A stretch of 64,000 nucleotides of DNA, from positions 124,001-188,000 of IMG/VR virus record IMGVR_UViG_3300005289_000052; one strand, given 5' to 3'. The notes under the pieces were generated by a model. The model worked only from the letters and a program-made list of their open reading frames with translations, was not told where the DNA came from and did not search any database. The position numbers and the translations under genes were made by a program. The number at the start of each line of letters is the position of its first letter. Position 1 is the first letter of the stretch. Shown piece after piece: positions 2,643 to 61,793 of this stretch.

Positions 2643-2676
2643 CGGCATAGAGGGAGGCCACCGCCTCCCCTTATGC
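2643..2676. terminator. Bidirectional hairpin terminator with TATGC(CG) on both arms
   Basis: CGGCATAGAGGGAGGC-CACC-GCCTCCCCTTATGC between convergent genes. Confidence 0.75.
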
Positions 2677-3126
2677 TCAGAGCTTACGGATCGTCAGATC
2701 CACGGCACCCAGGTAAACCCAGCTACCGTCTTTGGCGAGCAGTTGGAGCGTCTTGCTTTCACCAGCAGCCACCGGCAGGGTCGCATCTTGCTCGAAAGCC
2801 AGTTCACTGGCGATGAGTTTGTAGCGATCTGCAATCAGCGTGATAATGGAGGCCAGAGTGTCACCGGCTTGTAAGGTGTAGGTGGTCGACTTCACGATCT
2901 CCTCCACGTACAGGCGACGGTAGTTCAACGTCTGGGTTCCGTAGAACTCGTTGTTGAGGGTAGCCTCGACAGTGAGGGAAGAGTTCTTGACAGTGATGTC
3001 GCCGCTGCTGTCGATCTGCACCAGGTCTTTGATGACGAAATCATCGAGCGTAAACGACGTGCCGTTGGTCTCGTTGATCTGGTTGATGACGTTCTGAAGC
3101 GGACTTAAAGTGTGATCAACTAGCAC
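2677..3126 (-). CDS. Virion structural protein, same paralog family
   Basis: Start reassigned to GTG 3126 (AGGAG upstream); NSSLTVEA..FYGTQTLNYRRL motif. Confidence 0.65.
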   Translation of the reverse strand: MLVDHTLSPLQNVINQINETNGTSFTLDDFVIKDLVQIDSSGDITVKNSSLTVEATLNNEFYGTQTLNYRRLYVEEIVKSTTYTLQAGDTLASIITLIADRYKLIASELAFEQDATLPVAAGESKTLQLLAKDGSWVYLGAVDLTIRKL

Positions 3127-3231
3127 GTTGATACTCCTGTTGTAGTAGGGACGTCTATAACGATAGGTGCTCGGCGACGTATCATTTGACGGGAGCAATC
3201 CCACCCACTTTCTAAAGCAGGCGTCTTTGCC

Positions 3232-3762
3232 ATGTACCACATTGGAATGAAATCTGTAGAGCAGTTACTCGCTCTACTTAACGACACCAACGGGTTGTCG
3301 TTAACACTTGATGACATCCAGTTCAGTACTCCGGTTGTGCTGACCCCAGAGTCTCAGGTAGGCGACGACAATCCTGCCAACACTGAGATTCTGATTGTTG
3401 CCAAGCCTAATCGCAAGCCGATTGGTGAGGTAAAGGTTCGGTACGATCGGATTGATCTGGCTGACTTTGAAACTCTGCGTGACCCGACTGAGATCGAGGT
3501 TACACTCCCCCTGACCCATGCTCGATTAATGGAAGCTTTCAATATCCATTACGGTTCCGCTCTGGAACTGGAAGACATTGACGTCACCACTGTCCTACCT
3601 GAGGACATCGACGAGGAAACTTTCGTTGAGCTGAAAGCCTCTACAGGCTCGCTAGCTTATCGAGGAGAGATCCTACTGTCTGTGATCCCAGGTACGATCA
3701 AGCTCAGCAATGTGATCATTGTAAGAGCACTCAGTGGCCTTGAGTATATGGGTCGACCTTAA
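3232..3762 (+). CDS. Virion structural protein, same paralog family
   Basis: 176 aa; NTEILIVA..GEVKVRYDRIDL; ends LSNVI..LSGLEY. Confidence 0.65.
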   Translation: MYHIGMKSVEQLLALLNDTNGLSLTLDDIQFSTPVVLTPESQVGDDNPANTEILIVAKPNRKPIGEVKVRYDRIDLADFETLRDPTEIEVTLPLTHARLMEAFNIHYGSALELEDIDVTTVLPEDIDEETFVELKASTGSLAYRGEILLSVIPGTIKLSNVIIVRALSGLEYMGRP

Positions 3763-3764
3763 TG

Positions 3765-3791
3765 AAGGGGCCTTCGGGCCCTTTTATGCCG
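3765..3791 (+). terminator. Hairpin + TTTTATGCCG terminator
   Basis: GGGGCC-TTCG-GGCCCTTTTATGCCG just after the stop codon. Confidence 0.75.
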
Positions 3792-3861
3792 GAGTTTGTG
3801 TGTAATTTTTAATATCTTATGAGTAGGGCATAAGTCCTACTTCGTTTACCTGGAGATCCCC

Positions 3862-4368
3862 ATGAAAATCAATGTCGCAAAAACTGGTGCCGAGAACATT
3901 CTGGCCCTGGTACTGGACGCTAACCCAGGTCTGTCGCTGACCGCTGCCCAGTTCACTCTGGGTAACCCAAGCGCATTCGTGGGTACTGCTGGTCGTAACA
4001 CCCAAGTCACCCTGACCGCTGTTGAAGGTGAGGGCAAGACTGGCTCCAAAGTCATCGACTACACCCGTCTGAACCCAGTGACCGGCCCTAACGCTGGTCA
4101 AGCTGTGACTGGCGTGGAAACTGCGCTGGACGCTACTGACGTACAAGTCAAAGCTGCCCTGGTTGCTCTGTTCGGTCTGGTTGCTGCTGACGTTGTCGTG
4201 TCTGATCTGGTTCTGCCAGTTGACGCCGACACCGACGGTTCCATCACCCTGGCCGCTGGCGCCAACAGCCTGCTGTACGTTGGCTCCACCTCCGTGGTGC
4301 TGAAAGCTCCGGTCGACGATATCAGCGATATCGAAGGTCAGATGAACGGTTTCGAACCTGAAGCCTAA
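3862..4368 (+). CDS. Virion structural protein, same paralog family
   Basis: 168 aa, GGAG SD, strongly biased codons; NTQVTLTA..GSKVIDYTRL; ends GQMNGFEPEA. Confidence 0.7.
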   Translation: MKINVAKTGAENILALVLDANPGLSLTAAQFTLGNPSAFVGTAGRNTQVTLTAVEGEGKTGSKVIDYTRLNPVTGPNAGQAVTGVETALDATDVQVKAALVALFGLVAADVVVSDLVLPVDADTDGSITLAAGANSLLYVGSTSVVLKAPVDDISDIEGQMNGFEPEA

Positions 4369-4373
4369 GTAGT

Positions 4374-4410
4374 CGGCATAAAGGGAGGCCTTCGGGCCTC
4401 CCTTTATGCT
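4374..4410. terminator. Bidirectional terminator, TTTATGC on both arms
   Basis: GCATAAAGGGAGGCC-TTCG-GGCCTCCCTTTATGC, perfect inverted repeat. Confidence 0.85.
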
Positions 4411-4415
4411 GTCTG

Positions 4416-5063
4416 TCACAGGAAGTACAATTCCAGATGCTCTTTGATCTTCTCGAGGTTTTCAGCCACAGGAAGTTCTGCATCCAACACCAGCGAACGT
4501 TCAGTGGTGTGTGGGTGTCGCACTTGGAAACCTTCACGCACTGCATCATGGTACTCGATGCCTTTCAGCTCGATGCGGTCTTTGGCACGCACGAGATCAG
4601 ACTGACGAGCCATTGCCACACGAGGGTCGATATCGAGGAACACCACGAGATCAGGACGGAACCCTTTAAGAGCGATCTCTTCAACCTTGAGGAAGTCCAA
4701 CGTGTCTACCACAGAATCGTCCACAGCATGACATTGCATGGCGTAAGACGAATCGGTGTAGCGGTCGCTCAGTACGACGTTACCCAACTCAAGTTTCGGC
4801 TTGATCATCTCTTCGGTGTGTTGAATCCGACCAGCCATGAAGCAGAACAGTTCTGCCATTGGGTTGAACGGTTCGTCACGCCTTTTGAGCAGAAGCTCAC
4901 GAATCTCTTCAGCCAATTCTGTTCCACCCGGTTCACGGGTTTCTACCACATGGTTGGAGATACGAGTCCGCAGCCAGTTTGCCACCTCGATACGCATGGT
5001 GGTTTTGCCGCAGAAGTCAGGTCCTTCAAAAGCCATGAAGAACGGTTTAACTTGATTGCTCAT
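4416..5063 (-). CDS. tmk: Thymidylate (dTMP) kinase
   Basis: FEGPDFCGKTT P-loop, TREPGGT, LSDRY and PDLVVFLD motifs. Confidence 0.95.
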   Translation of the reverse strand: MSNQVKPFFMAFEGPDFCGKTTMRIEVANWLRTRISNHVVETREPGGTELAEEIRELLLKRRDEPFNPMAELFCFMAGRIQHTEEMIKPKLELGNVVLSDRYTDSSYAMQCHAVDDSVVDTLDFLKVEEIALKGFRPDLVVFLDIDPRVAMARQSDLVRAKDRIELKGIEYHDAVREGFQVRHPHTTERSLVLDAELPVAENLEKIKEHLELYFL

Positions 5064-10034: not shown

Positions 10035-10075
10035 AAAAAAAAACACCCCTAGACAAGCGGGTGTTTCTTATGCCG
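10035..10075. terminator. Hairpin with U9 on the minus strand and TATGCCG on the plus strand
   Basis: A9-CACCC..GGGTGTTTCTTATGCCG. Confidence 0.75.
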
Positions 10076-10935: not shown

Positions 10936-10992
10936 AGTTAAAACTCCCTTGAGCATTGAGATTAGAAGGTTAGGTACCAATGTTACACTAGA

Positions 10993-11012
10993 GTAATATA
11001 GACTTGAGATTT
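10993..11012 (-). promoter_or_regulatory. phiKZ-type early (virion RNAP) promoter
   Basis: Minus strand AAATCTCAAGTCTATATTAC contains the phiKZ early motif TATATTAC. Confidence 0.75.
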
Positions 11013-11032
11013 ATTTATTTCCAGTTAACAGA

Positions 11033-11066
11033 CGGCATAAAAGCCCGCCCCGAAGGACGGGCTTTT
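11033..11066 (-). terminator. Hairpin + TTTTATGCCG terminator of the head-protein unit
   Basis: Minus strand AAAAGCCCGTCC-TTCG-GGGCGGGCTTTTATGCCG. Confidence 0.8.
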
Positions 11067-11097
11067 ACTAGACGACTGAATCAGTCGACTTCAAGAA

Positions 11098-19155: not shown

Positions 19156-19193
19156 CGGCATAGAGGGAGGCCTTCTGGCCTCCCCTTATGACG
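19156..19193. terminator. Bidirectional terminator with TATG arms
   Basis: CGGCATAGAGGGAGGCC-TTCT-GGCCTCCCCTTATGACG; nearly identical to 2643-2676. Confidence 0.8.
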
Positions 19194-22247: not shown

Positions 22248-23942
22248 GTGAACCAACCAAATTTTAACCCAGATGAAGTGAAAGGTTACGAAGTTAAACA
22301 CGTGACCTATACCCGTTCGAATAACCGAGATTCGAATGATGATGCGCTGATCATTAAGAAGATCGCGCACATGAAAAACGGTGACCAGATCCCGTTCCTC
22401 GATTTGGAGAAGAACTATAAACGTACGTTCTATCTGGAGCGTAATCAGAACTACACCGAGAAGAAGACTCAGCAGAAACTGCGGCGTCTGCAACAGTTCA
22501 CTTGTACCCAACGTAACCTGATCCCTTCGATCGGTCGTGCGTTAGGTCGTGGTAGCGTTAAAGGTGGTTTACGGACTATCGCTCGTAACCCTTTCTTATA
22601 CGGCACCGACATCACCAGTGCGACCCTGTACAAGCAGGACTTCCGTAAAGCGTACCCGGACTGTAACTCGCCTAACCGTGTAGCAGTATTCGACATTGAA
22701 ACTGATGTCGTAAACGGTGACGGTAGCGAACCGATCTGTATGTCCCTGACTTTCAAGGACAAGGTTTTCCTCGTTGTTACGAAGAAGTGGATCGGCACCA
22801 TTCAGGAGTTCGAGAAGAAAGCACACGCAGCGGCTGACAAGTATCTAAGCGAGCACTTCAAAGCTCGTAACATCACCATGGAAGTTATGGTGGTGGATAC
22901 TCCTGGTCAAGCGGTGGTGGAAACCTTCAAGCGTGCTCACGAGTGGAAGCCTGACTTCGTATCCGTCTGGAACATCAACTTCGACCTTCCAAAATGCTTG
23001 GCAGTATTGCAGAAAGAAGGCATCGACCCAGCACAGGTGTTCTCTGATCCGTCGGTTCCAGAAGAGTTCAAGTTCTTCCGTTATAAAGAAGGCAACGCCA
23101 CCAAGGTTACTGCAACTGGTCGAGTGGACTCCATTCACCCAGCAGAACGTTGGCACGTGGCCGAGTGTCCAGCTACCTTCTTCTTGATTGACTCGATGTG
23201 CGTGTACAAACGTATCCGCATGGCGAAGCAGAACGAACCGAGCTACGGCTTGGACGCAGTCATGAAGAAGAACCTCAAGAACCTGGGTAAGCTCAAGTTC
23301 GCTGAGGCAGATGCTTACAGTGGTCTGCAATGGCACATTTTCATGCAGGACAACTACAAGGTCGAATACTCGATCTATAACGTCTTTGACTGCATTGGTG
23401 TGGAGATCCTCGACGAGAAGATCAAAGACCTACAACTGGTTATCTCGACGCAATCCAAAGCATCGGAGTACACCATCTATAACTCGCAACCTAAGCGACT
23501 TGTGGATGACTTCTACTTCTTCTGCTTGGAGCGTGATTTTGTTCTGGGTTCTTGCTCGGACGAAATGGCTCACGAGTACGATCAGTACGTAACTGACATG
23601 AAGGGTTGGATCGTTACGCTACCGTCTCACCAGACTGTAGACAACGGTATTGCAGTGTTGGAGGAAATGCCAGACGTACGGACCTACATCCGAACGCACG
23701 TGGCTGACTTGGACATTGTATCCACCTACCCGAACGTACAGGTGATCCTGAACATCTCTCGTGAGACTACTCGCCGTGAGCTGTACAAGATTGCAGGTGT
23801 CGACGTCCGTACACAACGGATGGCAGGCATTAACCTGACGGGTGGACATGTCAATGCTGTTGAGATTGCGTGCTCGATCTACCAAGCACCTAACTTCGAC
23901 ATGTTGCTGAAAGACTTCGAAGAAGAGCAGAAGGCGGCATAA
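22248..23942 (+). CDS. Split family-B DNA polymerase, exonuclease + motif A subunit (phiKZ gp82-like)
   Basis: ExoI FDIET, ExoII WNINFD, ExoIII YNVFD, PolB motif A DLDIVSTYP. Confidence 0.85.
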   Translation: MNQPNFNPDEVKGYEVKHVTYTRSNNRDSNDDALIIKKIAHMKNGDQIPFLDLEKNYKRTFYLERNQNYTEKKTQQKLRRLQQFTCTQRNLIPSIGRALGRGSVKGGLRTIARNPFLYGTDITSATLYKQDFRKAYPDCNSPNRVAVFDIETDVVNGDGSEPICMSLTFKDKVFLVVTKKWIGTIQEFEKKAHAAADKYLSEHFKARNITMEVMVVDTPGQAVVETFKRAHEWKPDFVSVWNINFDLPKCLAVLQKEGIDPAQVFSDPSVPEEFKFFRYKEGNATKVTATGRVDSIHPAERWHVAECPATFFLIDSMCVYKRIRMAKQNEPSYGLDAVMKKNLKNLGKLKFAEADAYSGLQWHIFMQDNYKVEYSIYNVFDCIGVEILDEKIKDLQLVISTQSKASEYTIYNSQPKRLVDDFYFFCLERDFVLGSCSDEMAHEYDQYVTDMKGWIVTLPSHQTVDNGIAVLEEMPDVRTYIRTHVADLDIVSTYPNVQVILNISRETTRRELYKIAGVDVRTQRMAGINLTGGHVNAVEIACSIYQAPNFDMLLKDFEEEQKAA

Positions 23943-23984
23943 AAGGCAAAAAAAAGAAGGGGTGCAAGCCCCTTCTTTATGCCG
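23935..23984. terminator. Bidirectional compound terminator
   Basis: Plus strand: hairpin-TTTATGCCG. Minus strand: hairpin-T8-GCC-TTTTATGCCG. Confidence 0.8.
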
Positions 23985-29905: not shown

Positions 29906-29950
29906 AGAACGAAAGGTTAGGGACCGATATAACTCAGTCTATTCACCAGT

Positions 29951-29970
29951 GTAATATAGATTTGAGATTT
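29951..29970 (-). promoter_or_regulatory. Early (virion RNAP) promoter
   Basis: Minus strand AAATCTCAAATCTATATTAC, 19/20 identical to 10993-11012. Confidence 0.8.
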
Positions 29971-29993
29971 TTTTGATTCCAGTTTACACGTAT

Positions 29994-30668: not shown

Positions 30669-30706
30669 AAAAAAAAAGCAGGGGATGCGGCCCCTGCTTT
30701 TATGCC
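30669..30706. terminator. Bidirectional terminator (U9 minus, TTTTATGCC plus)
   Basis: A9-GCAGGGG..CCCCTGCTTTTATGCC. Confidence 0.8.
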
Positions 30707-30707
30707 A

Positions 30708-31106: not shown

Positions 31107-31772
31107 TTACGACAAACGCATGTTGCGTTGGGCAATTTTCAGTAAGTCTTCGATCGGACGACTATTGTGAATGCGTTCCCGAAGTTTGAGTTTTTGTTCC
31201 CCAGACTCTTTATCTGGAGCCCAACCCACAGCACTATAGCGTTCGCTAGAATGTGGATCGAAATGCACAGCCATCCTGAAAGCATCCAACCAACCAATCT
31301 TGAATGTTTTCAGATAAGCTTCAAAGTAGGTAGCACCAGAACCGATAGCGATTGGGAGTTCTTTATCTGGCACTTCCCGAATATTGAGTATCTTCCTGCG
31401 AGTGATGATACTGAAACGATGTACCTTCCCAGTCTCAGTGACGATCAGCGCAGTGCCGCGAGGAATGTTGTTCTTCGTCAAGTTCAGCGCTTCAAACGAT
31501 TCAACAACGTGGTTCAGATCCGAACCCAAAGGCCAAATGGCCTCAAGGAAATTCCCTGTGTTGCCATCGCCAGCGCAACCCATGAACACGGCTACCTCAC
31601 CGCCAACCTTACGCTTCACTACGCCCTTATTGAGCATGATGATCTTTTGCGTGTTCTCTTTACTGCTGGTTCCAGTCGAGCCACACGAGTCACAGGAGAA
31701 TTCCATCGGATTGATGTGCGTCGATTTAAGGTCAGCGTACATCACTTTACCGTTTGTAGCAATCGTTGTCAC
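31107..31772 (-). CDS. HslV/proteasome-beta-like Ntn peptidase
   Basis: N-terminal (M)TTIA..YAD, QKI, AGD, AIGSGA, AVHFDPHS. Confidence 0.7.
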   Translation of the reverse strand: MTTIATNGKVMYADLKSTHINPMEFSCDSCGSTGTSSKENTQKIIMLNKGVVKRKVGGEVAVFMGCAGDGNTGNFLEAIWPLGSDLNHVVESFEALNLTKNNIPRGTALIVTETGKVHRFSIITRRKILNIREVPDKELPIAIGSGATYFEAYLKTFKIGWLDAFRMAVHFDPHSSERYSAVGWAPDKESGEQKLKLRERIHNSRPIEDLLKIAQRNMRLS

Positions 31773-31803
31773 AGGCCTTTCCTTCTTAGGATCTAATTAG
31801 AAC

Positions 31804-31832
31804 GGGGTCCCACAAGAGGACCCCATATGCCG
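31804..31832. terminator. Hairpin with plus-strand TATGCCG
   Basis: GGGGTCC-CACAAGA-GGACCCC-ATATGCCG. Confidence 0.55.
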
Positions 31833-32904: not shown

Positions 32905-32977
32905 GCGACATCTTCCTTCTAAGGATTCATAAATAGCTTAGGTGTGTGAGATTAAACAACTGTTGTCTCTCACCTGA

Positions 32978-32997
32978 GTAATATGTATCTCAAATTT
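32978..32997 (-). promoter_or_regulatory. Early promoter variant
   Basis: Minus strand AAATTTGAGATACATATTAC. Confidence 0.65.
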
Positions 32998-33006
32998 GTT
33001 TCATTG

Positions 33007-33031
33007 CGGCATAGAGGGCCCGAAGGCCCTC
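33007..33031 (-). terminator. Hairpin + TATGCCG with no U tract
   Basis: Minus strand GAGGGCC-TTCG-GGCCCTC-TATGCCG. Confidence 0.7.
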
Positions 33032-39276: not shown

Positions 39277-39327
39277 CGGCATAGAAGCAAAAAAAAGAGC
39301 CCTGGGAAACCGGGGCTCTTTATGCCG
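39277..39327. terminator. Bidirectional compound terminator
   Basis: Plus strand: hairpin-TTTATGCCG. Minus strand: hairpin-T8-GCTTCTATGCCG. Confidence 0.8.
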
Positions 39328-39939: not shown

Positions 39940-39961
39940 ACTCCTCACCTTTCTTAAGGCT

Positions 39962-39991
39962 GGCATAAAACGTAGGGGACCGAAGTCCCCC
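39962..39991 (-). terminator. Hairpin + TTTTATGCC
   Basis: Minus strand GGGGAC-TTCG-GTCCCC-TACGTTTTATGCC after the helicase. Confidence 0.65.
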
Positions 39992-39995
39992 ACAA

Positions 39996-45855: not shown

Positions 45856-46200
45856 ATGGCCATGCCTATTTCCCAGAAAATGATTGACCCTGGAGCGCAG
45901 GTCTATTACGACCAAGCTTTCAGACGAGTACTTGAAACACACTTGGGTCTGCTCCGAAATATGGCCGATACCAAAGCTGTAGAGATCACCAACGATCTGG
46001 CCTACAAGTTCGAGTACGACTTTTACGGGCTGCTCCAAGCTAAAAACGTGCCGGAGTACTTACACTGGGTTGTCATGCGGGTTAATGACATGACTGATCC
46101 ACGACAATACTTAAGCTCTATGAATCAGTTCCTCTATCCACCGGCTGAGGTCATTGAGAACATTCGCCGGATTTATGCAACCACTGTCAATAAGCTATAA
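45856..46200 (+). CDS. Small conserved protein, possibly T4 gp53/LysM-like baseplate wedge
   Basis: 114 aa, GAGG SD; YLHWVVMRVNDMTDP pattern. Confidence 0.5.
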   Translation: MAMPISQKMIDPGAQVYYDQAFRRVLETHLGLLRNMADTKAVEITNDLAYKFEYDFYGLLQAKNVPEYLHWVVMRVNDMTDPRQYLSSMNQFLYPPAEVIENIRRIYATTVNKL

Positions 46201-46241
46201 AAAAGAAAGAGAGGGTTTGACCCCTCTCTTTCTTTATGCCG
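46199..46241. terminator. Bidirectional terminator (U-rich minus, TTTATGCCG plus)
   Basis: AAAGAAAGAGAGGG..CCCTCTCTTTCTTTATGCCG. Confidence 0.8.
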
Positions 46242-54976: not shown

Positions 54977-55378
54977 CTAACCATTGTTGGCATCAAAGAT
55001 AGCAACCACTTTCGAGTTGATCACTTGGATTTCCTTACCGACGCTATAAATGACGGCGTCCTGGGTAACCGTTGCGTCCACTCGGAGGTTGATGTTGTCG
55101 GGGTTAGTGTCGTCCACTGCGGTAATCGTCACATCTACTTGGATGGTATCGAAGTAGGGGTTGATGAAGTTAGTCACTACGCGCTTGGTTTCAGTACGTA
55201 GCAAACTGCGGTTGTCCGCACACTCCTTGATCAGATTCGGCAGCGAAGACACTTGCCCTTGATACAGATGACTCTGGGAGAAGTCACTCAAAAAGAAATA
55301 GCTGATTAACTTATCCAGCTTCTCTGCAATGTTCCCAACCCAGCCGGAAGCACTGAGAGACGGCACTTGTACGGCCAT
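54977..55378 (-). CDS. Conserved small protein, possibly T4 gp25-like
   Basis: Start ATG 55378 (GAGGG SD); helix followed by three beta strands. Confidence 0.5.
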   Translation of the reverse strand: MAVQVPSLSASGWVGNIAEKLDKLISYFFLSDFSQSHLYQGQVSSLPNLIKECADNRSLLRTETKRVVTNFINPYFDTIQVDVTITAVDDTNPDNINLRVDATVTQDAVIYSVGKEIQVINSKVVAIFDANNG

Positions 55379-55427
55379 TAGCTCTACCCTCAAAAGACAT
55401 ATAAAGGAAGAAGAGGGTAGAAAAGAC

Positions 55428-55456
55428 AAAAAAAAAGAAAGGGAGCCGAAGCCCCC
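55428..55456 (-). terminator. Hairpin + U9 terminator
   Basis: Minus strand GGGGGC-TTCG-GCTCCC-TTTC-T9. Confidence 0.75.
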
Positions 55457-55477
55457 TAACTTTTCCCAGTCCGAAGA

Positions 55478-56092
55478 CTAAAGCGAGGCGTTGTAACGAC
55501 TGGTTGGGTCGTCACGGCCTTCTTTAATCTTACGGATCAGATTGCCAATCGAGTTTTCCAGAATGACTTGCTCGTCATGCTGCAACTCACGGTCGCCTTC
55601 GTTGAGTTCCTCGAAGAACGTCCATGCTACCCAGTCTTCTTCGGTTTCTTGCACCACACCATTCATGAGGCGGCGGTAGTCATAATGATCATGACCAATC
55701 GCATTGCCTTCGGTGTTCTTGTAGGTGTCAGAATAACCGTCGAGTTTCTGAGCCAGGTAGCGTGCCCGAATGAACGGGTCTGCCATGAGGTAACGCTGCA
55801 TCACCGGTGGAGCATTTTGCATCTGTGCAATCGATGATAACAGCCGGATAGCATCAGTATCCCACATGGTCTGGACACTACGAACAGCAGCACGAGCCGC
55901 CCGCATTGCATCTTGACCGAAATACTGATCCCACTTCTGCGTAGCCATCTGCACGAATGCTCGACCAGAATCCGTAAGGTTCTGAGTAAACATCGCGGCA
56001 GATTCAGCCAGGTACTGCATTGTTGATTCGGCTCTTGGCGCGTACGCCAATTCGTTGAATGCCAACGAGCCGCCTTCGATATAGCCTGCCAT
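55478..56092 (-). CDS. Chimallin-block conserved protein (phiKZ gp59/Imp3 position, tentative)
   Basis: 204 aa, GAGGGAG SD; ends DDPTSRYNASL; synteny only. Confidence 0.55.
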   Translation of the reverse strand: MAGYIEGGSLAFNELAYAPRAESTMQYLAESAAMFTQNLTDSGRAFVQMATQKWDQYFGQDAMRAARAAVRSVQTMWDTDAIRLLSSIAQMQNAPPVMQRYLMADPFIRARYLAQKLDGYSDTYKNTEGNAIGHDHYDYRRLMNGVVQETEEDWVAWTFFEELNEGDRELQHDEQVILENSIGNLIRKIKEGRDDPTSRYNASL

Positions 56093-56133
56093 GGTAGCTC
56101 CCTCGTTACATACTTTATTGGCTACCTGTAAGA

Positions 56134-56415
56134 TTAGACGTGCTCAAACCCTCGGGCAGCCAGCCATTCAGGTTGAGCGTTAGTTGCGACCAGCACCATG
56201 GAGTCGGTTCCTTTGTCCACCAGGTACAGGTCATATTGCTTCTTGTCATCGTGTTGACGACCGCGCAGTTCGAAAACCACGTTGTGTTCCGCGAGTCCTT
56301 GCTTCATCGACACGAAGTCTTCCGCCGGTTGTGGGAACATGGCAAGATAGAGAGCAGGGGTGGAGTGGTGTCCATCCTTGATCATCTGGAGCACTTTCTC
56401 AGCACTGGTGTTCAT
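56134..56415 (-). CDS. Hypothetical protein
   Basis: 93 aa, AAGGA SD. Confidence 0.65.
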   Translation of the reverse strand: MNTSAEKVLQMIKDGHHSTPALYLAMFPQPAEDFVSMKQGLAEHNVVFELRGRQHDDKKQYDLYLVDKGTDSMVLVATNAQPEWLAARGFEHV

Positions 56416-56462
56416 AGTTTCCTTTTCCTTAAAAGGGAAGGGGGACTCAAGTCCCCCAGAGG

Positions 56463-57905
56463 TTAGCGGCCATGGTGAATGAAGTTGGCAAGCGTTGCGA
56501 TGATTGGTGCAGGAAGCGATACGTGTCCAGAGATTGCCCTGGGGTTACGTAGATCCAGTACACCATTATGCGGGGCCAACGGGTCCAACTTGAGAAGCGT
56601 CTTTTCGTCCAGGATCACAATGCCGTTCAAGGCGTCACCGTCAAAGTCGGCGTTCATCCCGGACAGGATGTTCACAGATGGGCTGATGGTGTTGATCTTG
56701 GGGTCTTTCTTGATGCGACGGATGTACAGGCGCTGAGCCGAGAGACGGGTCAACGTCGGGTTACGCTGGAAGATTACCGCAATACCGCCACGGTGTCCTT
56801 CTGCGATCAGTTCCTCAAACAGCTCATCCAGCAGTGGGTGATACCGCAGGGTGTGCTCGTAAAGGAACTTGTTGATTTCGTTCGGGCTAAAGAGTTGGTC
56901 TGTTCCCGGAACGCAACGACGAAGTAGCTTGCTGGTCAGGTGAACCTTCAAGGTCATCACTGCCATCGGCCACGGTAGTTCGAGATCCTCGTAGTGGTGA
57001 GGGTCAGACAGGGACGAAATTACACCACGGAACGAGTAGTTAACTCGAGAGCCGAAGATGTGCTTACGATACCAGCCTGGCTTACCACCCAGTTGCCCTG
57101 CGATGAAAGGCGCATAATAAGCCACCAACATGTTCAGAGCTTTGATCGTCATCACTTCAATCTGCCGAGGTTTCAGCGGAGTGGGTGAGTTTTCGATCGA
57201 ACTGAATGTCCGCATGGCGTTAATCGCCGGAGTCATCCCTGTGTCAGCGTAGGTGCCAGTTGCCGTGTTCTCCGTAATAAAGGAGATCCGACTTGGACAG
57301 GGGATATACTTCGAGAAGATCGCATGACGGTACATCTGGACAAACATCAACGCGTCGTCCATTTGTTGCTGGTTCTTGTTGTTCGGAAGAATCTCCCGCA
57401 AGAACAAGTTCATCAGGTCATCGAAATGCCTGTAGAACGTATTGATACCCCGACCAATGTTCAGCCCTTTCAGGTACTGCAACACGTGTTGGGCATCGTT
57501 GTTGGGGGGAATGTACGATGGATTGGTTACCCAGTCCAGTAGGTTCGTTCCCTTGAAAGCGAAGATCGGCTTAAGCACATGGAGTGCCCAAGGGTTGATC
57601 AGTGCGTCAATGCCTCTTGGCGCAGCAATCCACAACAAGGACTCCAAAGGTCTTTCCGTAACCGACATACAGGGAAACCCGCAGTGGTCACACACAACAC
57701 CAACGTTGTGTTCGTACTTAACCCTCTTACATTCACATGACGGCACGACGTCTAAGGTGTCACCCTCATAACGCGTCATGATCATTTGGTTCAGTCGTTC
57801 CCGATCCAGCTCGGTAGTAACATCGAAGTCGTTGATGATCACGGGAGCTGTTGTCAACTTGTTGAACAACTCATCGTGACTAACGATTTCCGCTTCTACG
57901 CCCAT
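56463..57905 (-). CDS. Non-virion RNAP beta' N-terminal/catalytic subunit (phiKZ gp55-like), intron-free
   Basis: Zn ribbon CEC..CDHC, RGVIS, RNPTL, catalytic NADFDGD. Confidence 0.93.
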   Translation of the reverse strand: MGVEAEIVSHDELFNKLTTAPVIINDFDVTTELDRERLNQMIMTRYEGDTLDVVPSCECKRVKYEHNVGVVCDHCGFPCMSVTERPLESLLWIAAPRGIDALINPWALHVLKPIFAFKGTNLLDWVTNPSYIPPNNDAQHVLQYLKGLNIGRGINTFYRHFDDLMNLFLREILPNNKNQQQMDDALMFVQMYRHAIFSKYIPCPSRISFITENTATGTYADTGMTPAINAMRTFSSIENSPTPLKPRQIEVMTIKALNMLVAYYAPFIAGQLGGKPGWYRKHIFGSRVNYSFRGVISSLSDPHHYEDLELPWPMAVMTLKVHLTSKLLRRCVPGTDQLFSPNEINKFLYEHTLRYHPLLDELFEELIAEGHRGGIAVIFQRNPTLTRLSAQRLYIRRIKKDPKINTISPSVNILSGMNADFDGDALNGIVILDEKTLLKLDPLAPHNGVLDLRNPRAISGHVSLPAPIIATLANFIHHGR

Positions 57906-57923
57906 GGGCTACTCCTGAAGTGA

Positions 57924-57960
57924 CGGACATAAAAAGAAAAGGGGACCGAAGTCCCCTTTT
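57924..57960 (-). terminator. chmA terminator
   Basis: Minus strand AAAAGGGGAC-TTCG-GTCCCCTTTTCTTTTTATGTCCG. Confidence 0.8.
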
Positions 57961-57985
57961 GCTCAGTGCAACACGCTACCGCTTA

Positions 57986-60022
57986 TTAACGGTTCCAGGT
58001 CCCGGTGAAGGGGGAACCGAACATGCGGGAACCTTGTTGCTGACCGCCACCGTAGTTGAAGAAGCCACCAACGTTGTTGGCAACCAGGTGGTTGAGGTCG
58101 TAGCCGCCGCGCTGGGTCAGGACGTTGTTGTCGTCCAGGCCTTTCGCAGGACGCACGTTCAGACCGCAACGTACGATTGCTTCGGACAGCGCTTCCAGGA
58201 AGGAGTTGTCGAAGCTTACGCGACGAGCAAAGCCTTTGACGTGGATTTCCGATGCCAGGAGCTGACGCAGGATTTCTTTGCGCTGAGCCAGGCGGATTTC
58301 CAGAGGAACCTGGATGTTGCGGTGAGTTTCTTCCCACGCCTCGACCAGTTTCGGGTTGGTCTTGCCAGCCAGGTTGAGGATGGCCAGGTAGTCGATCTCA
58401 CGCAGGTCACGACGATTGCCTTCGCGATCGTAGTAGAAGCCCAGGTGGATACGGTCCTGATCGTCGTAGCACACTGGCTTGGACGCATCGAACAACTGCT
58501 GGAAGTGACCCATGGTCAGGTTGTTGGCTGCTTGCAGGATGGTCAGACGTGCGTTCTCGTCGCCGTTGGCGGCCGCGATGTAGGTCTGGTGAATCCAGGA
58601 CAGCTCGCCAACCTCGGCGATGTCGAGGGTGAAGATCAGCTTTTGACCGATCAGCATGTTGATGAGCTGGCGCATTTCGTTGTCACCGAAGTCGGCGGAA
58701 CGAGTTGGCAGTGCATCAGGCTTGGCTTGCGGATCGCCGGTCAGGTTGACTTCGTAACCGGTAGCACCCAGGTCTTTCAGGTCCACGTCGGTAGCCTTGC
58801 CCTTGTTGGCGCGCCAGGTACCGGTGAACAGGCCGTTGCGGTTCAGGCCGAAAGCAGTGGACAGGGCCAGGAGTTGCAGCTCCATGTTCACGGCGTCGGT
58901 CAGGGTGTCGACCGAGGTCAGCACCATACGCGGCTGGTACATCTGGGTAGCCATCATTTGCTGCTGGTTGCCGAACATGCCGAAGGCTTGCTGCTGAGGC
59001 TGGAAGCCTGCTTGAGCCGGTTGGTACATCAGGTCGACGTAGCCAGCGACGCGAGTCAGTTGGCGGGTCTGTTGCAGGCTGAACTGCGAGTCGGCTTGGG
59101 ACTGCGCGGACATGGTGACGATGATGTCTTCACGTACCGGCATGCCCACGATGTCTTCGCCGTGCTGACGAGTGAACTCGACGCGCGCGCTCAGTTGGTC
59201 GCCGGAGCCGACTTCACCCAGGGTGAACGGTTCTTCGTTGCCGCCGAGCTGGTTGTCCATGATGGTGTAGCAGGCCTGGGTGCTGTTGTGCAGCAGGCGG
59301 TTGAAGCGGTTCTCGGTGCTGACTTCAGCTTCGGCTGGAATCACAACGCCACCGGCATCGTGGATCTGAGCGTTGAAGCCGTAGCTGTTGATGACGAACT
59401 GCTCCAGAACTTGCCAGTACGACTTGTTCAGGTAGATGTCGCCAGGCACGATGTCGACTTCGACGGTGGTGCCGCCCAGGTTCACGCTGCTTGGGTCCAG
59501 TGGAGCGCCGCTCGATTCGACCAGCAGGCTGTAGACAGCGATGTGCTTCTGGCCCTGGTATTCTTCGTAGTAGCAGACCAGGATGCTGGAGAAAGTCACC
59601 TTGGACTGGTTGTTGTCCAGTACCAGGATGTTGAACTCTTTCTTCTGCTGTTCGGTCAGCACTTTGCCAGCGCGTTCTTTCAGACCCAGTTGAATGGTCT
59701 GAACGTCTTCACCGGACATGTTCCGTGGAACAGGGCGGCGGTGGTTGGCGTTGATGTCCAGGACCGAACGGCCACGGCTACCTACGCGGGAGTTGTTGTT
59801 GGATTGCTGGTTCATCTGAGCACCTGCGTTGAAAGGCTGTTGCGGTTGAGCATTGCCGCCAGTTGGCTGCTGTTGCTGCCCACCGGTTGGTTGTTGAGTT
59901 TGTTCTTGGGGCTGTTCAGCACCCGTTGGAGTCATACCCGCTTTCAGCATGGCATCTGCCATTGCGCTGTTCTGCGGCTGGTTCCCCTGGCTCTGGCCAG
60001 GTCCATTACGTTTGACGGACAT
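57986..60022 (-). CDS. chmA: Chimallin, major phage-nucleus shell protein
   Basis: 678 aa, very strong codon bias, disordered termini, directly upstream of the NADFDGD subunit (diagnostic synteny), own promoter and terminator. Confidence 0.88.
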   Translation of the reverse strand: MSVKRNGPGQSQGNQPQNSAMADAMLKAGMTPTGAEQPQEQTQQPTGGQQQQPTGGNAQPQQPFNAGAQMNQQSNNNSRVGSRGRSVLDINANHRRPVPRNMSGEDVQTIQLGLKERAGKVLTEQQKKEFNILVLDNNQSKVTFSSILVCYYEEYQGQKHIAVYSLLVESSGAPLDPSSVNLGGTTVEVDIVPGDIYLNKSYWQVLEQFVINSYGFNAQIHDAGGVVIPAEAEVSTENRFNRLLHNSTQACYTIMDNQLGGNEEPFTLGEVGSGDQLSARVEFTRQHGEDIVGMPVREDIIVTMSAQSQADSQFSLQQTRQLTRVAGYVDLMYQPAQAGFQPQQQAFGMFGNQQQMMATQMYQPRMVLTSVDTLTDAVNMELQLLALSTAFGLNRNGLFTGTWRANKGKATDVDLKDLGATGYEVNLTGDPQAKPDALPTRSADFGDNEMRQLINMLIGQKLIFTLDIAEVGELSWIHQTYIAAANGDENARLTILQAANNLTMGHFQQLFDASKPVCYDDQDRIHLGFYYDREGNRRDLREIDYLAILNLAGKTNPKLVEAWEETHRNIQVPLEIRLAQRKEILRQLLASEIHVKGFARRVSFDNSFLEALSEAIVRCGLNVRPAKGLDDNNVLTQRGGYDLNHLVANNVGGFFNYGGGQQQGSRMFGSPFTGTWNR

Positions 60023-60070
60023 CGTGTGTTCCTTTCATTGAGGGTGAGCACTACAACAAACCATTTGCCT

Positions 60071-60221
60071 ATGCTCTATTTAATTACACTTGGCATGGTC
60101 TCACTTAGGTAATATGTGGCTCAAATGACTTTGAATCAAACATCACCTAAGCGGGTTACCAAGATCATGCGCCCATAAATCTAAATGCCGAAGCATCCAG
60201 TTGAGAGCATTCTCCTATAAC
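60071..60221 (-). promoter_or_regulatory. Structured chmA leader containing an early promoter (60109-60128)
   Basis: Nested stems with G-U pairs on the minus strand; TCATTTGAGCCACATATTAC promoter motif; TATG at 60224-60221. Confidence 0.55.
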
Positions 60222-60243
60222 ATAGTGCAGTGTATGTAAGAAA

Positions 60244-60540
60244 TTACTTTATCCTCACATTACTGATCAGCGAGTAGACGGTAAGTCCTTTCGCTTTAGC
60301 AGCTTTTCGAGCATCCATCTCGGCTTGAAGTTCCATCATTGACTTGGAATCAAATTCAAACTCCGTGATATCGTGACCACGGTTGTTGCTGATCCCCAGT
60401 ACAACTTTGCGTTCGAACTTCTTTCTGGCCTTAACAGCGGCCTTCACCGGCTCCGATGCAACGGACACTTGACCAGTAGACTGGGCAATTGCCAAACGCA
60501 GTGCTGCTTCGAAATCCGAGAGTTCATTGCTAACAACCAT
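60244..60540 (-). CDS. Small basic hypothetical protein
   Basis: 98 aa, AGGAG SD. Confidence 0.65.
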   Translation of the reverse strand: MVVSNELSDFEAALRLAIAQSTGQVSVASEPVKAAVKARKKFERKVVLGISNNRGHDITEFEFDSKSMMELQAEMDARKAAKAKGLTVYSLISNVRIK

Positions 60541-60599
60541 GGTTCAACTCCTAAGTTGAAAAAGTTTATAAGACAGATTACCTTGTGTCTGTCACGTGG

Positions 60600-60619
60600 A
60601 TATTATGTATTTGAAATTC
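60600..60619 (-). promoter_or_regulatory. Early promoter variant
   Basis: Minus strand GAATTTCAAATACATAATAT followed by CCACGTG. Confidence 0.5.
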
Positions 60620-60648
60620 CTTTTAATCAACTCTAAAGGGCCGCCCCA

Positions 60649-61749
60649 ATGTACACCCTTTTCAATGAACCGATCTGGGGTACGCAAGGTGCTAGCATTA
60701 CCTTCCCCAAATATCAGCGAGCTATTCAGGGGCTGCGCCAGAATCTGGACAAGGTGATCGAGTACAACCGTACCTATCCACGTGCCGTTGATAGTGGTCA
60801 CTTCCTCGTGAAACTGCTGCAATCCCTTAACGTACCATTGTCCATGGACGTGAACATTTACAGGGATCGTGTCGAGGAAGCCGCAGAAGGTCTCGCTATG
60901 GCGATGAACCTCACCTCTTCATTATACCGTGGTCGAGTCTTTAGTCCAGGACTTTTCTACGGGCCGGGTTCCTACGAGATCGTGGTTGCCCATGCTGAGG
61001 AATTCGATTTACGGGATATTGAGGATAACTGGGAGCAGTTGTGCCCAGTGACTTTCCTGACTCACCCCAAGACCGACCTCGGAATGGATACCCCCATGGG
61101 TTTCCAAACCAACGGTGAAGAAGGGTTGTCGATTATCCTGATCAACATTCCCATGCTGGCTGTGCAGTATAAACAGTGGCGTATTCGGGAGTGGCACCAG
61201 AATAATGAAGCGCAGCGGACGATGATGCAGTTTGTATCCTCGTATCCCCTGAACAACGCTTTGCATTCGCAGTTGGACATTGCGATCCTGAACCGTTTCA
61301 TGAATGTCTACCGGGGAGACCCAGTGGGACTGAGCATGATCCGTAAACCGTTTACCATGACTCGATGGGAAGCGGAACTGGACTTTGGGTTGGATCAGTA
61401 CGCCGAAGACTTGCAGAAACGCAAGTATACCTTCGATCACTTCTTAGCTGTCTTTAAAGGAGTGTCAGCATGGACCCTACGAGACGCTCTACGCATTCCT
61501 ACGATGGCACCGACCCGTCAGGTCACGTGGGCGCTTGCGATGTCCAGAGCGCGTCTGGTGGACTTCCTGTTGGACTGGACCAAAGAGAACCGAGTGGATC
61601 GTAACAAGAGCTACTGTAACGATATCCAGTTGGAAACTTCTCGACTGCTGAATGACAGTGCTCTGCGTAGCTCCCTCCCGCGTTGGGCATATCCAGCTTG
61701 GGAAGACCTCTTTAAAGAGATCATCGCCAAAGCTAAAAGCGTCCGCTAG
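60649..61749 (+). CDS. Conserved protein (phiKZ gp52-like), putative virion component
   Basis: 366 aa between the polymerase and chmA, on the opposite strand. Confidence 0.6.
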   Translation: MYTLFNEPIWGTQGASITFPKYQRAIQGLRQNLDKVIEYNRTYPRAVDSGHFLVKLLQSLNVPLSMDVNIYRDRVEEAAEGLAMAMNLTSSLYRGRVFSPGLFYGPGSYEIVVAHAEEFDLRDIEDNWEQLCPVTFLTHPKTDLGMDTPMGFQTNGEEGLSIILINIPMLAVQYKQWRIREWHQNNEAQRTMMQFVSSYPLNNALHSQLDIAILNRFMNVYRGDPVGLSMIRKPFTMTRWEAELDFGLDQYAEDLQKRKYTFDHFLAVFKGVSAWTLRDALRIPTMAPTRQVTWALAMSRARLVDFLLDWTKENRVDRNKSYCNDIQLETSRLLNDSALRSSLPRWAYPAWEDLFKEIIAKAKSVR

Positions 61750-61793
61750 GGAAACGGGGAAGCCTTGCGGCCTCCCCGTTTCCCTTTATGCCG
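61749..61793. terminator. Bidirectional hairpin with TTTATGCCG
   Basis: GGGAAACGGGGA..TCCCCGTTTCCCTTTATGCCG; the polymerase stop codon lies inside the motif. Confidence 0.75.

What the first reader, a model, noticed from the sequence alone, without database searches (positions are those of the whole stretch)
2643..61793. Two-class terminator code: hairpin+U8-9 after early units, hairpin+TATGCCG after late/middle units
Seen: 15 intergenic hairpins carry TATGCC(G) or a close variant just 3' of the stem (2643, 3765, 4374, 10035, 11033, 19156, 23935, 30669, 31804, 33007, 39277, 39962, 46199, 57924, 61749). Structural and replication genes end in hairpin + 0-4 U + TATGCCG; 33007 has no U tract at all. 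Units driven by TATATTAC-type promoters end in long U runs (10035, 23948, 30669, 39289, 55428). At 23935 and 39277 the minus strand stacks both signals in tandem. Known: TATG is the phiKZ late-promoter core read by nvRNAP. Inference: nvRNAP uses a sequence-specific termination or processing signal related to its promoter motif, while vRNAP uses classical intrinsic terminators.
Basis: partly seen in the sequence, partly recalled or inferred. Interest (0 to 1): 0.72.

Follow-up and report, generated by a model that had tools for sequence, protein, structure and literature searches.

The report
phiKZ-type terminators in a jumbo phage
The hairpin-plus-TATGCCG signals are this uncultivated phiKZ-like jumbo phage's version of a terminator motif already mapped in phiKZ, and a second, classical U-tract terminator class is almost confined to its early-promoter operons.

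Summary
17 TATGCCG lie in the window against 4.2 expected. 14 of them sit 0-4 nt after a stable intergenic hairpin.

Genome-wide (243.7 kb phiKZ-like phage), TATGC is the most enriched 5-mer after intergenic hairpins. The box is strand-specific: 71 of 128 sites where a gene ends upstream on that strand, against 18 of 134 on the opposite strand. It is commonest at convergent gene ends (37 of 44), so it is not a promoter for the next gene.

The consensus CCC-TT-TATG-CCG-T matches the published phiKZ terminator motif (hairpin + TTATKYYGT, found at 61 of 133 mapped 3' ends). It recurs in phiKZ, two Xanthomonas phages and 30 metagenomic relatives. The signal is therefore known, and this is a new member.

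The two-class idea is partly supported.
- About 21 early-type promoters all lie on the minus strand.
- All ~21 hairpin+U6-10 terminators are also on the minus strand (0 of 34 plus-strand ends), mostly after unconserved small genes.
- The same strand pairing appears in eight relatives.

The partition leaks. Box-type terminators occur inside early-promoter units, for example after chimallin. One U-type terminator follows a head-protein gene.

No RNA data exist for this phage, so polymerase-specific reading of the box remains an untested inference.

The parts
2643..2678 (.). Bidirectional box-type terminator between convergent virion-protein genes. The minus strand reads hairpin+TC+TATGCCGTCA. 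The plus strand reads hairpin+CT+TATGCTC. Member of the GGCATAGAGGGAGGCC...GGCCTCCCCTTATGC subfamily.
   Evidence: PHROG virion proteins
3762..3791 (+). Box-type terminator (hairpin+TTT+TATGCCG) after a virion-protein paralogue. A separate promoter-like TATGAGTAGG follows at 3818.
4369..4416 (.). Perfect 15-bp palindromic bidirectional box-type terminator (GCATAAAGGGAGGCC-N4-GGCCTCCCTTTATGC), dG -36, between a virion-protein gene (+) and thymidylate kinase (-).
10035..10075 (-). U-type terminator (GGCATAA-hairpin-T9-GG) ending the two-gene early unit started at the promoter at 10993. The opposite strand carries an orphan TTCTTATGCCGTC with no plus-strand gene upstream.
10979..11031 (-). Early-type promoter (GGAAATAAATAAATCTCAAGTCTATATTACTCTAGTG; ATATTAC at 10993-10999), 30 nt downstream of the terminator at 11033.
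11033..11067 (-). Box-type terminator (hairpin+TTT+TATGCCGTC) after an internal head protein gene.
19156..19193 (.). Bidirectional box-type terminator between the 970-aa virion structural protein gene (+; TATGACGTCA) and a 410-aa gene (-; TATGCCGTTA).
23935..23984 (.). Composite terminator. The plus strand (DNA polymerase end) reads A8-hairpin-TT-TATGCCGTCA. The minus strand (end of a 14-gene early unit) reads hairpin-T8-GCC-TTT-TATGCCG.
29937..29989 (-). Early-type promoter (ATATTAC at 29951-29957) heading a run of 14 small genes that ends at 23953.
30669..30707 (.). Composite terminator. The minus strand reads hairpin-T8/9-GC (U-type, end of the early unit from the promoter at 32978). The plus strand reads hairpin-TT-TATGCCA.
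31802..31832 (+). Hairpin with the box only on the plus strand (CCCCA-TATGCCGC), while both neighbouring genes are on the minus strand. On the sense strand it is a hairpin with no box and no U run.
32964..33016 (-). Early-type promoter (ATATTAC at 32978-32984) starting directly after the terminator at 33007.
33007..33031 (-). Box-type terminator with no U at all (GAGGGCCTTCGGGCCCTC+TATGCCG) after a phosphatase-like gene.
39277..39327 (.). Composite terminator. The plus strand reads A8-hairpin-TT-TATGCCG. The minus strand reads hairpin-T8-GCT-TC-TATGCCG.
39961..39993 (-). Internal co-directional box-type hairpin (variant TTTTATGCCA) after a helicase gene, 35 nt before the next gene.
46199..46241 (.). 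Composite terminator. The plus strand reads hairpin-TT-TATGCCGTCA. The minus strand reads hairpin-TTTCTTTTTTATA (U-rich) after three conserved genes of unknown function.
55428..55457 (-). U-type terminator (AGGGGGCTTCGGCTCCCT+TTCTTTTTTTTTG) closing the chimallin/RNA-polymerase-subunit early region.
57925..57963 (-). Box-type hairpin with a U-rich spacer (TTTTCTTTTTATGTCCGTC) after the chimallin gene and 31 nt before the RNA-polymerase subunit gene. It is a box-type signal inside an early-promoter unit.
60095..60147 (-). Early-type promoter (ATATTAC at 60109-60115) upstream of the chimallin gene. A second, variant copy lies at about 60600.
61748..61793 (+). Box-type terminator (16-bp stem, dG -35, CTT+TATGCCGC) after a 366-aa virion-like gene. 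The convergent minus-strand gene shares the hairpin but has no box and no U run.

Best explanation
[quoted passage not shown] The hairpin+TATGCCG elements are its transcription terminators. They match the family-wide phiKZ-type terminator: a GC-rich stem-loop, often with a UUCG loop, then 0-4 pyrimidines, then the box TATG-YY-G-T.

**How it most likely works (inferred).** The RNA hairpin forms behind the polymerase. The short U-rich stretch UUUAU gives a weak hybrid. The U-then-G step and the GC-rich CCG just ahead hold the polymerase long enough for the hairpin to release the transcript. In this way the box replaces the long U tract of a classical terminator.

**Graded strength.** The canonical TATGCCG marks hard unit boundaries, namely convergent gene ends and sites just before early promoters. 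Degenerate boxes sit between co-directional genes 18-35 nt apart, where they probably act as leaky attenuators.

**Second class.** Hairpin + U6-10 + G(C), often with an upstream A tract so that it is bidirectional, closes the operons driven by early-type (virion polymerase) promoters.

**The partition.** The split between classes is real but statistical, not absolute.

**Shown and inferred.** Shown are the anatomy, strand specificity, position, class distribution and conservation. Inferred are that 3' ends form here, by analogy with mapped phiKZ and 201phi2-1 ends, and the pause mechanism.
For: - **Enrichment and hairpin adjacency:**
- **Strand specificity:** 71 of 128 sense sites against 18 of 134 antisense sites, p = 5e-13.
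- **Fixed position:** TATG starts -1 to +4 nt from the stem end in 40 of 48 perfect-stem cases.
- **Consensus:** CCC-TT-TATG-CCG-T. This equals the phiKZ motif BCCYCCCCHWWDGGGRRGGBYTTATKYYGT, found at 61 of 133 3' ends mapped by ONT-cappable-seq (PMC10914365). A similar motif occurs in 59 of the 132 mapped 201phi2-1 terminators (PMC11512511).
- **Conservation:** the same top 5-mers follow hairpins in phiKZ, RTH11 and LucasX and in 30 metagenomic relatives. At the orthologous DNA-polymerase 3' end the stems differ but the box persists in 14 loci.
- **RNA-level hairpin:** the TTCG loop is on the sense strand 13 times, against CGAA 3 times.
- **Boundary grading:** canonical box at 26 of 42 boundaries against 5 of 23 internal sites, p = 0.004.
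- **U-type class:** 0 of 34 plus-strand against 19 of 94 minus-strand ends. All early-type promoters are on the minus strand. Promoter-to-U-terminator units are listed. The pattern is replicated in relatives.
- **Phage identity:** chimallin, RNA-polymerase subunits and homologues of gp123 and the major capsid protein are present.
Against: - No transcript 3' ends are available for this phage. The public runs that hold it look like DNA.
- The box region GCCG would make a strong hybrid if the 3' end lay downstream of it. The exact release point is unknown.
- 45 of 128 sense hairpins carry neither signal.
- About 8 boxes adjacent to hairpins are orphans on the strand opposite to the flanking genes.
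- Co-directional box sites leave only 18-35 nt before the next gene, so either read-through or re-initiation must occur there.
- The pause mechanism is borrowed from cellular polymerases and is not shown for the phage enzymes.
Confidence: 0.62

Rival explanations
1. [quoted passage not shown] This causes a sequence-specific pause and release. The virion polymerase ignores the box and stops only at U tracts. Early transcripts would therefore read through box-type hairpins, while middle and late transcripts stop at them.
For: - phiKZ late promoters are TATG with G as +1, and all four bases are required (PMC4666361).
- gp123 binds the non-template TATG in a pocket under the beta lobe (PMC12809450).
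- A gp123 homologue is encoded here.
- Early-promoter runs pass through box-type hairpins and then end at U-type terminators, for example 88291 -> M@87955 -> six genes -> U@84542.
- Plus-strand units, which have no early promoters, never use U-type terminators.
- At four or more convergent sites the minus strand stacks both signals.
Against: - 201phi2-1 terminators carrying the related motifs also stop host polymerase in a terminator trap.
- The conserved part extends beyond TATG to YYG-T, which the promoter does not share. CC follows TATG in 39 of 76 hairpin-adjacent cases but in only 1 of 102 other intergenic cases.
- One U-type terminator follows a head-protein gene that has no early promoter.
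- In phiKZ an ATATTACA-headed unit ends in a box-type terminator.
- No biochemical data on termination by either phage polymerase were found.
Confidence: 0.2
2. **RNA tag.** The box is part of the mature 3' end of transcripts made inside the phage nucleus. It is bound by a phage RNA-binding protein or an RNase for processing, stability or export. Early transcripts are made before the nucleus exists, so they lack it.
For: - The box is strand-specific and adjacent to an RNA-type hairpin.
- The class split between early units and the rest would also follow from this model.
- Nucleus-forming phages must export mRNA and encode nucleus-associated RNA-binding proteins (title and abstract listed).
Against: - Conservation stops about 8-10 nt after the stem. 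That is the length of a transcription hybrid rather than of a protein-binding tail.
- Boxes also occur inside early-promoter units, for example after chimallin.
- No binding motif of this kind was found in the literature searched.
Confidence: 0.08
3. **Terminator-coupled promoter.** The TATG after the hairpin is a late promoter at which the non-virion polymerase re-initiates, with G as +1. It would feed the next gene, or make antisense RNA at convergent sites.
For: - The four-base core is the same as the phiKZ late promoter.
- At co-directional sites only 18-35 nt separate the box from the next start codon, which leaves no room for another promoter.
Against: - The box is twice as frequent at convergent ends (37 of 44) as before a same-strand gene (34 of 84).
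- The bona fide phiKZ promoter P119L has no upstream hairpin.
- Separate promoter-like TATGTAGAC and TATGAGTAG copies lie downstream of boxes.
- The box carries CCG, which other intergenic TATG copies lack.
Confidence: 0.07
4. **Selfish repeat.** The elements are copies of a small palindromic mobile or repeated element with GGCATAA/TTATGCC ends, and they have no role in transcription.
For: About ten near-identical copies (GGCATAGAGGGAGGCC-N4-GGCCTCCCCTTATGC) lie at convergent gene ends.
Against: - Most copies have unrelated stems and share only the box.
- The box is often on one side only and follows the direction of the upstream gene.
- It is kept at orthologous positions in relatives whose DNA polymerases are only 37-45% identical, while the stems change.
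Confidence: 0.03

Closest known systems
Conserved phiKZ terminator motif (Putzeys et al. 2024, microLife, PMC10914365) and motif A, with A/B combinations, of phage 201phi2-1 (PMC11512511)
   Same: - A GC-rich stem-loop (CCYCCCC...GGGRRGG here too, for example GGGAGGCC) is followed by YTTAT-K-YY-GT. The consensus here, TT-TATG-CCG-T, is an exact instance.
- It lies in intergenic regions at gene ends, with bidirectional copies between convergent genes.
- Flanking motifs lengthen the stem, as described for 201phi2-1 A/B combinations.
- The host phage is of the same family.
   Different: - The positions after TATG are fixed as CCG in this 52% GC genome, where phiKZ has T/C-T/C-G.
- No 3' ends are mapped here.
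- The near-exclusive use of a separate U-tract class in early-promoter operons, and the grading between canonical boxes at boundaries and degenerate boxes at internal sites, were not found in the papers I could read.
Canonical intrinsic (Rho-independent) terminators of bacteria
   Same: The U-type elements (hairpin + T6-10, often with an upstream A tract, bidirectional) fit the definition. The box-type elements share the GC-rich hairpin and its position after stop codons.
   Different: Box-type elements have on average 3.5 T in the 8 nt after the stem, against 6.3 for the U-type. One has none (w33007). They carry a conserved non-U box instead.
phiKZ late promoter (TATG, G = +1) read by the non-virion RNA polymerase
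   Same: The four-base core TATG is identical.
   Different: - The promoter needs no hairpin and has no conserved downstream bases.
- The box is anchored to a hairpin, extends to CCG-T, and is most frequent where no downstream gene exists.
Consensus elemental pause of multisubunit RNA polymerases (pyrimidine at -1, G at +1) and sigma-dependent promoter-proximal pausing at -10-like repeats (recalled from general knowledge, not tested)
   Same: - The U-then-G step sits at the expected distance from the hairpin.
- A promoter-like element is re-read during elongation.
   Different: - The upstream G at -10/-11 of the E. coli consensus is not conserved here.
- No evidence exists that the phage polymerases pause at this site.

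Membership tests
phiKZ-type conserved terminator (hairpin + TTATKYYGT) | GC-rich stem-loop of about 6-10 bp with a short loop | tested here: met
   Box-type sites have a mean perfect stem of 8.7 bp and a mean loop of 4.4 nt. The hairpins before window TATGCCG copies have dG -11.5 to -23.
phiKZ-type conserved terminator (hairpin + TTATKYYGT) | Box Y-TTAT-K-YY-G-T immediately 3' of the stem | tested here: met
   The position matrix from 71 sites gives T(.72) T(.75) TATG C(.82) C(.75) G(.66) T(.51). The offset is -1 to +4 nt in 40 of 48 cases.
phiKZ-type conserved terminator (hairpin + TTATKYYGT) | Lies downstream of genes on the transcribed strand, with bidirectional copies between convergent genes | tested here: met
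   71 of 128 sense sites against 18 of 134 antisense sites; 37 of 44 convergent ends.
phiKZ-type conserved terminator (hairpin + TTATKYYGT) | Coincides with experimentally mapped RNA 3' ends | not testable with these tools
   No RNA run holds this phage. The supplementary tables of the phiKZ and 201phi2-1 studies are not held.
phiKZ-type conserved terminator (hairpin + TTATKYYGT) | The phage belongs to the phiKZ-like nucleus-forming group with its own multisubunit RNA polymerases | tested here: met
   - Chimallin (phrog_4795, E = 3e-116).
- RNA-polymerase beta-type subunits (phrog_2987, phrog_3015).
- Homologues of phiKZ gp123, gp120 and gp97-101.
- Best protein hits are to Xanthomonas and Pseudomonas phiKZ-like phages.
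Canonical intrinsic terminator | Run of about 6-9 U directly after the hairpin | tested here: not met
   This applies to box-type elements, which have 3.5 T in the first 8 nt, and none at w33007. The feature is met for the ~21 U-type elements (T6-T10).
phiKZ late promoter (TATG, G = +1) | Lies upstream of, and points towards, a late gene | tested here: not met
   The box is most frequent at convergent ends, where it points into the antisense of the next gene (37 of 44 against 34 of 84).
phiKZ late promoter (TATG, G = +1) | Primary transcripts start at the G | not testable with these tools
   There are no transcript 5'-end data for this phage.
phiKZ-type early promoter (AT-rich element about -10, read by the virion polymerase) | Highly conserved AT-rich ~10-nt element upstream of operons of small genes, all on one strand | tested here: met
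   15 strong and 6 weaker matches to tnGAatnAAAnnAATCTCAnaTatATATTACccnAGTGAA, all intergenic and all on the minus strand. The literature description is in PMC7598289 and PMC8244752. Use by the virion polymerase is inferred.
Palindromic mobile or REP-like repeat | Copies share overall sequence and have no fixed relation to gene direction | tested here: not met
   Stems differ between copies and between orthologous sites. The box follows the direction of the upstream gene.

The most novel reading that the evidence does not exclude
The two terminator classes form a polymerase-specific punctuation system. The non-virion polymerase would re-use its promoter-reading pocket for non-template TATG to pause and terminate at hairpin+TATGYYG. 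The injected virion polymerase would read through those sites and stop only at U tracts. One DNA strand could then carry overlapping early and late transcription units with different ends, and tandem U+box elements would stop both enzymes.
Probability: 0.2. Interest if true: 0.75.

Novelty: new member of a known kind. Interest (0 to 1): 0.45.

Why it matters
**Known part.** The box-type terminator is already described for phiKZ and 201phi2-1. Finding it in a distant 52% GC metagenomic relative, and in some 30 other uncultivated relatives, shows it is a family-wide signal kept across deep divergence.

**Practical use.** It helps annotate transcription units in uncultivated jumbo phages. It also offers compact terminators that lack U tracts.

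**More interesting part.** Classical U-tract terminators are almost confined to the strand and operons that carry early promoters. This holds in this genome and in eight relatives.

**The open question.** How the two non-canonical multisubunit polymerases of these phages terminate is unknown. The box shares its TATG core with the late promoter, which the non-virion polymerase is now known to bind on the non-template strand. That makes a concrete hypothesis that can be tested in vitro.

Tried and rejected
**Searches that gave nothing**
- A megablast of the window against deposited phages found no match. Only protein-level relatives exist.
- RNA evidence: neither search for sequencing runs found a convincing RNA holder. 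The four runs I laid show flat, DNA-like contig depth for a 98-99% identical phage (X7, X8), or fragments, with no informative ends.
- The supplementary tables with phiKZ and 201phi2-1 3'-end coordinates are not held.
- Ceyssens et al. 2014, which gives the phiKZ temporal classes, is not held. I therefore could not test class against temporal class in phiKZ.

**Readings rejected**
- The promoter reading, because of the convergent-end excess and the CCG extension.
- The mobile-repeat reading.
- Sigma-70 promoters, which are not enriched (7-11 found against 12-14 expected per 20 kb). This fits transcription that is independent of the host.

**Limits of my own methods**
- My first hairpin finder (loops of 3-9 nt) missed w10053 and w55428. 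I widened the loop range for the second pass and checked the remaining sites by eye.
- Gene calls are my own heuristic. The last ~8 kb of the genome and the tRNA region were excluded from the statistics.

Full report
**What the sequence is.**
- The window is bases 124,001-188,000 of a 243,669-bp IMG/VR virus record with terminal repeats and 52% GC.
- No deposited phage matches it at the DNA level.
- Its 970-aa virion protein is 36-44% identical to proteins of phiKZ-like jumbo phages: Xanthomonas RTH11, LucasX and Xoo-sp14, and Pseudomonas Noxifer and PhiPA3.
- The window encodes chimallin (nuclear shell protein, E = 3e-116), RNA-polymerase beta-type subunits, a DNA polymerase, a helicase, an internal head protein and several virion proteins.
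- The genome has homologues of phiKZ gp120 (capsid), gp123 (non-virion polymerase beta-C), gp128-131 and gp97-101.
- Sigma-70-like promoters are not enriched.
- It is therefore a nucleus-forming phiKZ-like phage that should transcribe with its own virion and non-virion polymerases.

**Check of the observation.**
- TATGCCG occurs 17 times in the window against 4.2 expected.
- 14 copies are directly preceded by a hairpin of dG <= -11.5, where 5% of random positions reach -12. The other three copies are inside genes.
- At two of them (10069+, 31826+) the box lies on the strand opposite to both neighbouring genes.
- The U-run terminators and the two tandem U+box sites are as described.

**Unbiased genome-wide test.**
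- I called 278 genes with a simple codon-usage model.
- I collected intergenic hairpins.
- TATGC is the most enriched 5-mer in the 14 nt after intergenic perfect-stem hairpins: 38 of 178 flanks against 0.65 expected. Hairpins inside genes show nothing comparable.
- Of 131 intergenic hairpins scored on both strands, the box (TATG plus CC, CT, AC, TC, TT, CA or CG) is present at 71 of 128 sites where a gene ends upstream on the same strand. It is present at 18 of 134 sites on the other strand (p = 5e-13).
- TATG starts -1 to +4 nt from the stem end in 40 of 48 perfect-stem cases.
- The consensus is CCC-TT-TATG-CCG-T.
- UUCG loops are on the sense strand 13 times, against 3 for the complement. 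This points to an RNA hairpin.

**It is not a promoter for the next gene.**
- The box is present at 37 of 44 convergent gene ends but at only 34 of 84 co-directional ends (p = 2e-6).
- Intergenic TATG copies that are not next to a hairpin are followed by CC in 1 of 102 cases. Hairpin-adjacent copies are followed by CC in 39 of 76 cases.
- Separate promoter-like copies lie downstream of some boxes. One example is cTTATGTAGAC at genome 43427, which resembles the phiKZ late promoter P119L, gcTATGTAGAC.

**It is already known.**
- Putzeys et al. 2024 mapped 133 phiKZ terminators by ONT-cappable-seq. They found that 61 share 5'-BCCYCCCCHWWDGGGRRGGBYTTATKYYGT-3', a stem-loop followed by TTAT (PMC10914365).
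- In 201phi2-1, a strongly similar motif A occurs in 59 of the 132 mapped terminators. Co-occurring motifs lengthen the stem, and eight such terminators also stopped host-polymerase transcription in a terminator trap (PMC11512511).
- TTATGCCGT is an exact instance of TTATKYYGT.
- I confirmed the conservation directly. TTATG and TATGC are the top 5-mers after hairpins in 43-50 kb of phiKZ, RTH11 and LucasX and in 30 metagenomic loci around DNA-polymerase homologues.
- At the orthologous 3' end of the polymerase gene, 14 loci keep hairpin+YTATG(Y/A)YG(T) while the stems change.

**The palindromic look.**
- At convergent ends the hairpin is flanked by GGCATAA ... TTATGCC, so each strand sees the box after the stem.
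- About ten copies share the stem GGGAGGCC and a conserved A-C mismatch at its base.
- A composite form reads CGGCATAAAAGGC-A8-stem-loop-stem-TT-TATGCCG.
  - On one strand this gives hairpin+TTTATGCCG.
  - On the other strand it gives hairpin+U8+GCC+TTTTATGCCG.
  - In the window it occurs at 23935-23984 and 39277-39327, with simpler versions at 30669-30707 and 46199-46241.

**The two-class claim.**
- About 21 sites match an early-type promoter, tnGAatnAAAnnAATCTCAnaTatATATTACccnAGTGAA. All are intergenic and all are on the minus strand. This is the architecture described for vRNAP early promoters and their one-strand bias (PMC7598289, PMC8244752).
- Hairpins followed by T6-T10, usually then G(C), number about 21. 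All are on the minus strand: 0 of 34 plus-strand ends against 19 of 94 minus-strand ends (p = 0.003).
- Walking downstream from each early promoter, most runs end in a U-type or U+box terminator.
- Genes just upstream of U-type terminators are mostly unconserved: 5 of 21 have any PHROG hit. For genes upstream of box-type terminators in the window the figure is 16 of 17.
- The strand pairing is replicated in relatives.
  - In three relatives with 74-94% identical polymerase, T7G is 0/17, 1/20 and 1/10 forward/reverse, and the early-promoter pattern is 0/11, 0/11 and 0/3.
  - Five distant relatives show the same bias. Three of them also carry enough TATATTAC copies to show that it lies on the same strand.

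**Where the code leaks.**
- Box-type hairpins lie inside early-promoter runs.
  - One lies after chimallin (TTTTCTTTTTATGTCCGT), 31 nt before the polymerase-subunit gene.
  - Others are at genome 87955 and 56575.
- One U-type terminator (TTTTATTTTTTGC at genome 50227) follows a gp128 head-protein homologue in a run without an early promoter.
- In phiKZ an ATATTACA-headed unit ends in TTTATGTCGT.
- The box is graded. Canonical TATGCCG is found at 21 of 37 convergent ends and at 5 of 5 sites just before early promoters, but at only 5 of 23 internal co-directional sites (p = 0.004). This fits strong stops at unit boundaries and leaky stops inside operons.

**Mechanism.**
- Shown: an RNA-type hairpin plus a strand-specific box at a fixed short distance, at gene ends, conserved across the family. 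In two cultured relatives the same motif is found in the regions around mapped 3' ends.
- Inferred: the short UUUAU stretch, the U-to-G step and the GC-rich CCG pause the polymerase so that the hairpin can release the RNA without a long U tract.
  - It is attractive because gp123 binds non-template TATG (PMC12809450), and because early runs pass through boxes before ending at U tracts.
  - It is weakened because the host polymerase is also stopped by related terminators, and because the conserved YYG-T is not shared with promoters.
  - I give it about 0.2.
- An RNA-tag role and a re-initiation role are not excluded, but they fit the data less well.

**What could not be done.**
- No RNA data exist for this phage.
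- The coordinate tables of the phiKZ and 201phi2-1 studies and the phiKZ temporal-class paper are not held.

**Verdict.**
- The element is a new member of a known kind, the phiKZ-type terminator.
The two classes and their association with early and non-early units are real and conserved, but the partition is statistical, and polymerase-specific reading of the box is untested.

Noticed in passing
window 10993, 29951, 32978, 60109 and 60600 (strong); 45811 and 50667 (weak); all on the minus strand: Early-type promoters with a long consensus, tnGAatnAAAnnAATCTCAnaTatATATTACccnAGTGAA. All ~21 genomic copies are on the minus strand. Five sit within ~50 nt downstream of a canonical box-type terminator.
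   Followed up: yes
window 1893-4368: Four small paralogous virion structural protein genes (phrog_1037/2935). Three are on the plus strand and one on the minus strand. Each has its own box-type terminator.
   Followed up: partly
window 56463-60022 (-): The chimallin gene is followed 31 nt after a U-rich box-type hairpin by an RNA-polymerase subunit gene (phrog_2987). This is the same adjacency as phiKZ gp54/gp55, recalled from memory. The hairpin could set a high shell-to-polymerase ratio by partial termination.
   Followed up: partly
genome 2613, 5780, 17879, 23261, 45716, 210487; window 2652, 4376, 19165: A subfamily of near-identical palindromic terminators (GGCATAGAGGGAGGCC-N4-GGCCTCCCCTTATGC) at convergent gene ends. 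Their loops vary, and they share a conserved A-C mismatch at the stem base.
   Followed up: partly
window 10069 (+), 31826 (+); genome 605 (-), 91796 (+), 101933 (+), 225653 (+): Orphan boxes: hairpin-adjacent TATGCC(G) on the strand opposite to both flanking genes. They may stop antisense transcripts or mark unannotated small transcripts.
   Followed up: partly
genome 50227 (-), outside the window: A U-rich terminator (TTTTATTTTTTGC) after a homologue of the phiKZ gp128 head protein, in a run that has no early-type promoter. It is the one clear exception to the class rule.
   Followed up: yes
genome 192882-197588 (-), just beyond the window end: A cluster of 13 tRNA genes, all on the minus strand, downstream of an early-type promoter (198773) and a U-type terminator (198299).
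   Followed up: partly
genome 43427 (+); window 3818 (+): Promoter-like TATG copies a few nucleotides downstream of box-type terminators. The first, cTTATGTAGAC, closely resembles the phiKZ late promoter P119L (gcTATGTAGAC).
   Followed up: partly
window 55350-61300, in public runs X7 and X8: Two public runs, labelled as single organisms rather than metagenomes, hold a 98-99% identical phage at flat, DNA-like depth. A cultured host or lysate of this lineage may exist.
   Followed up: no
genome 203054-203926 (-): An HNH endonuclease gene forms a single-gene unit between a weak early-type promoter (203959) and a T10 terminator.
   Followed up: no
window 31110-31772 (-): An HslV-family peptidase-like gene lies inside an early-promoter unit.
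   Followed up: no
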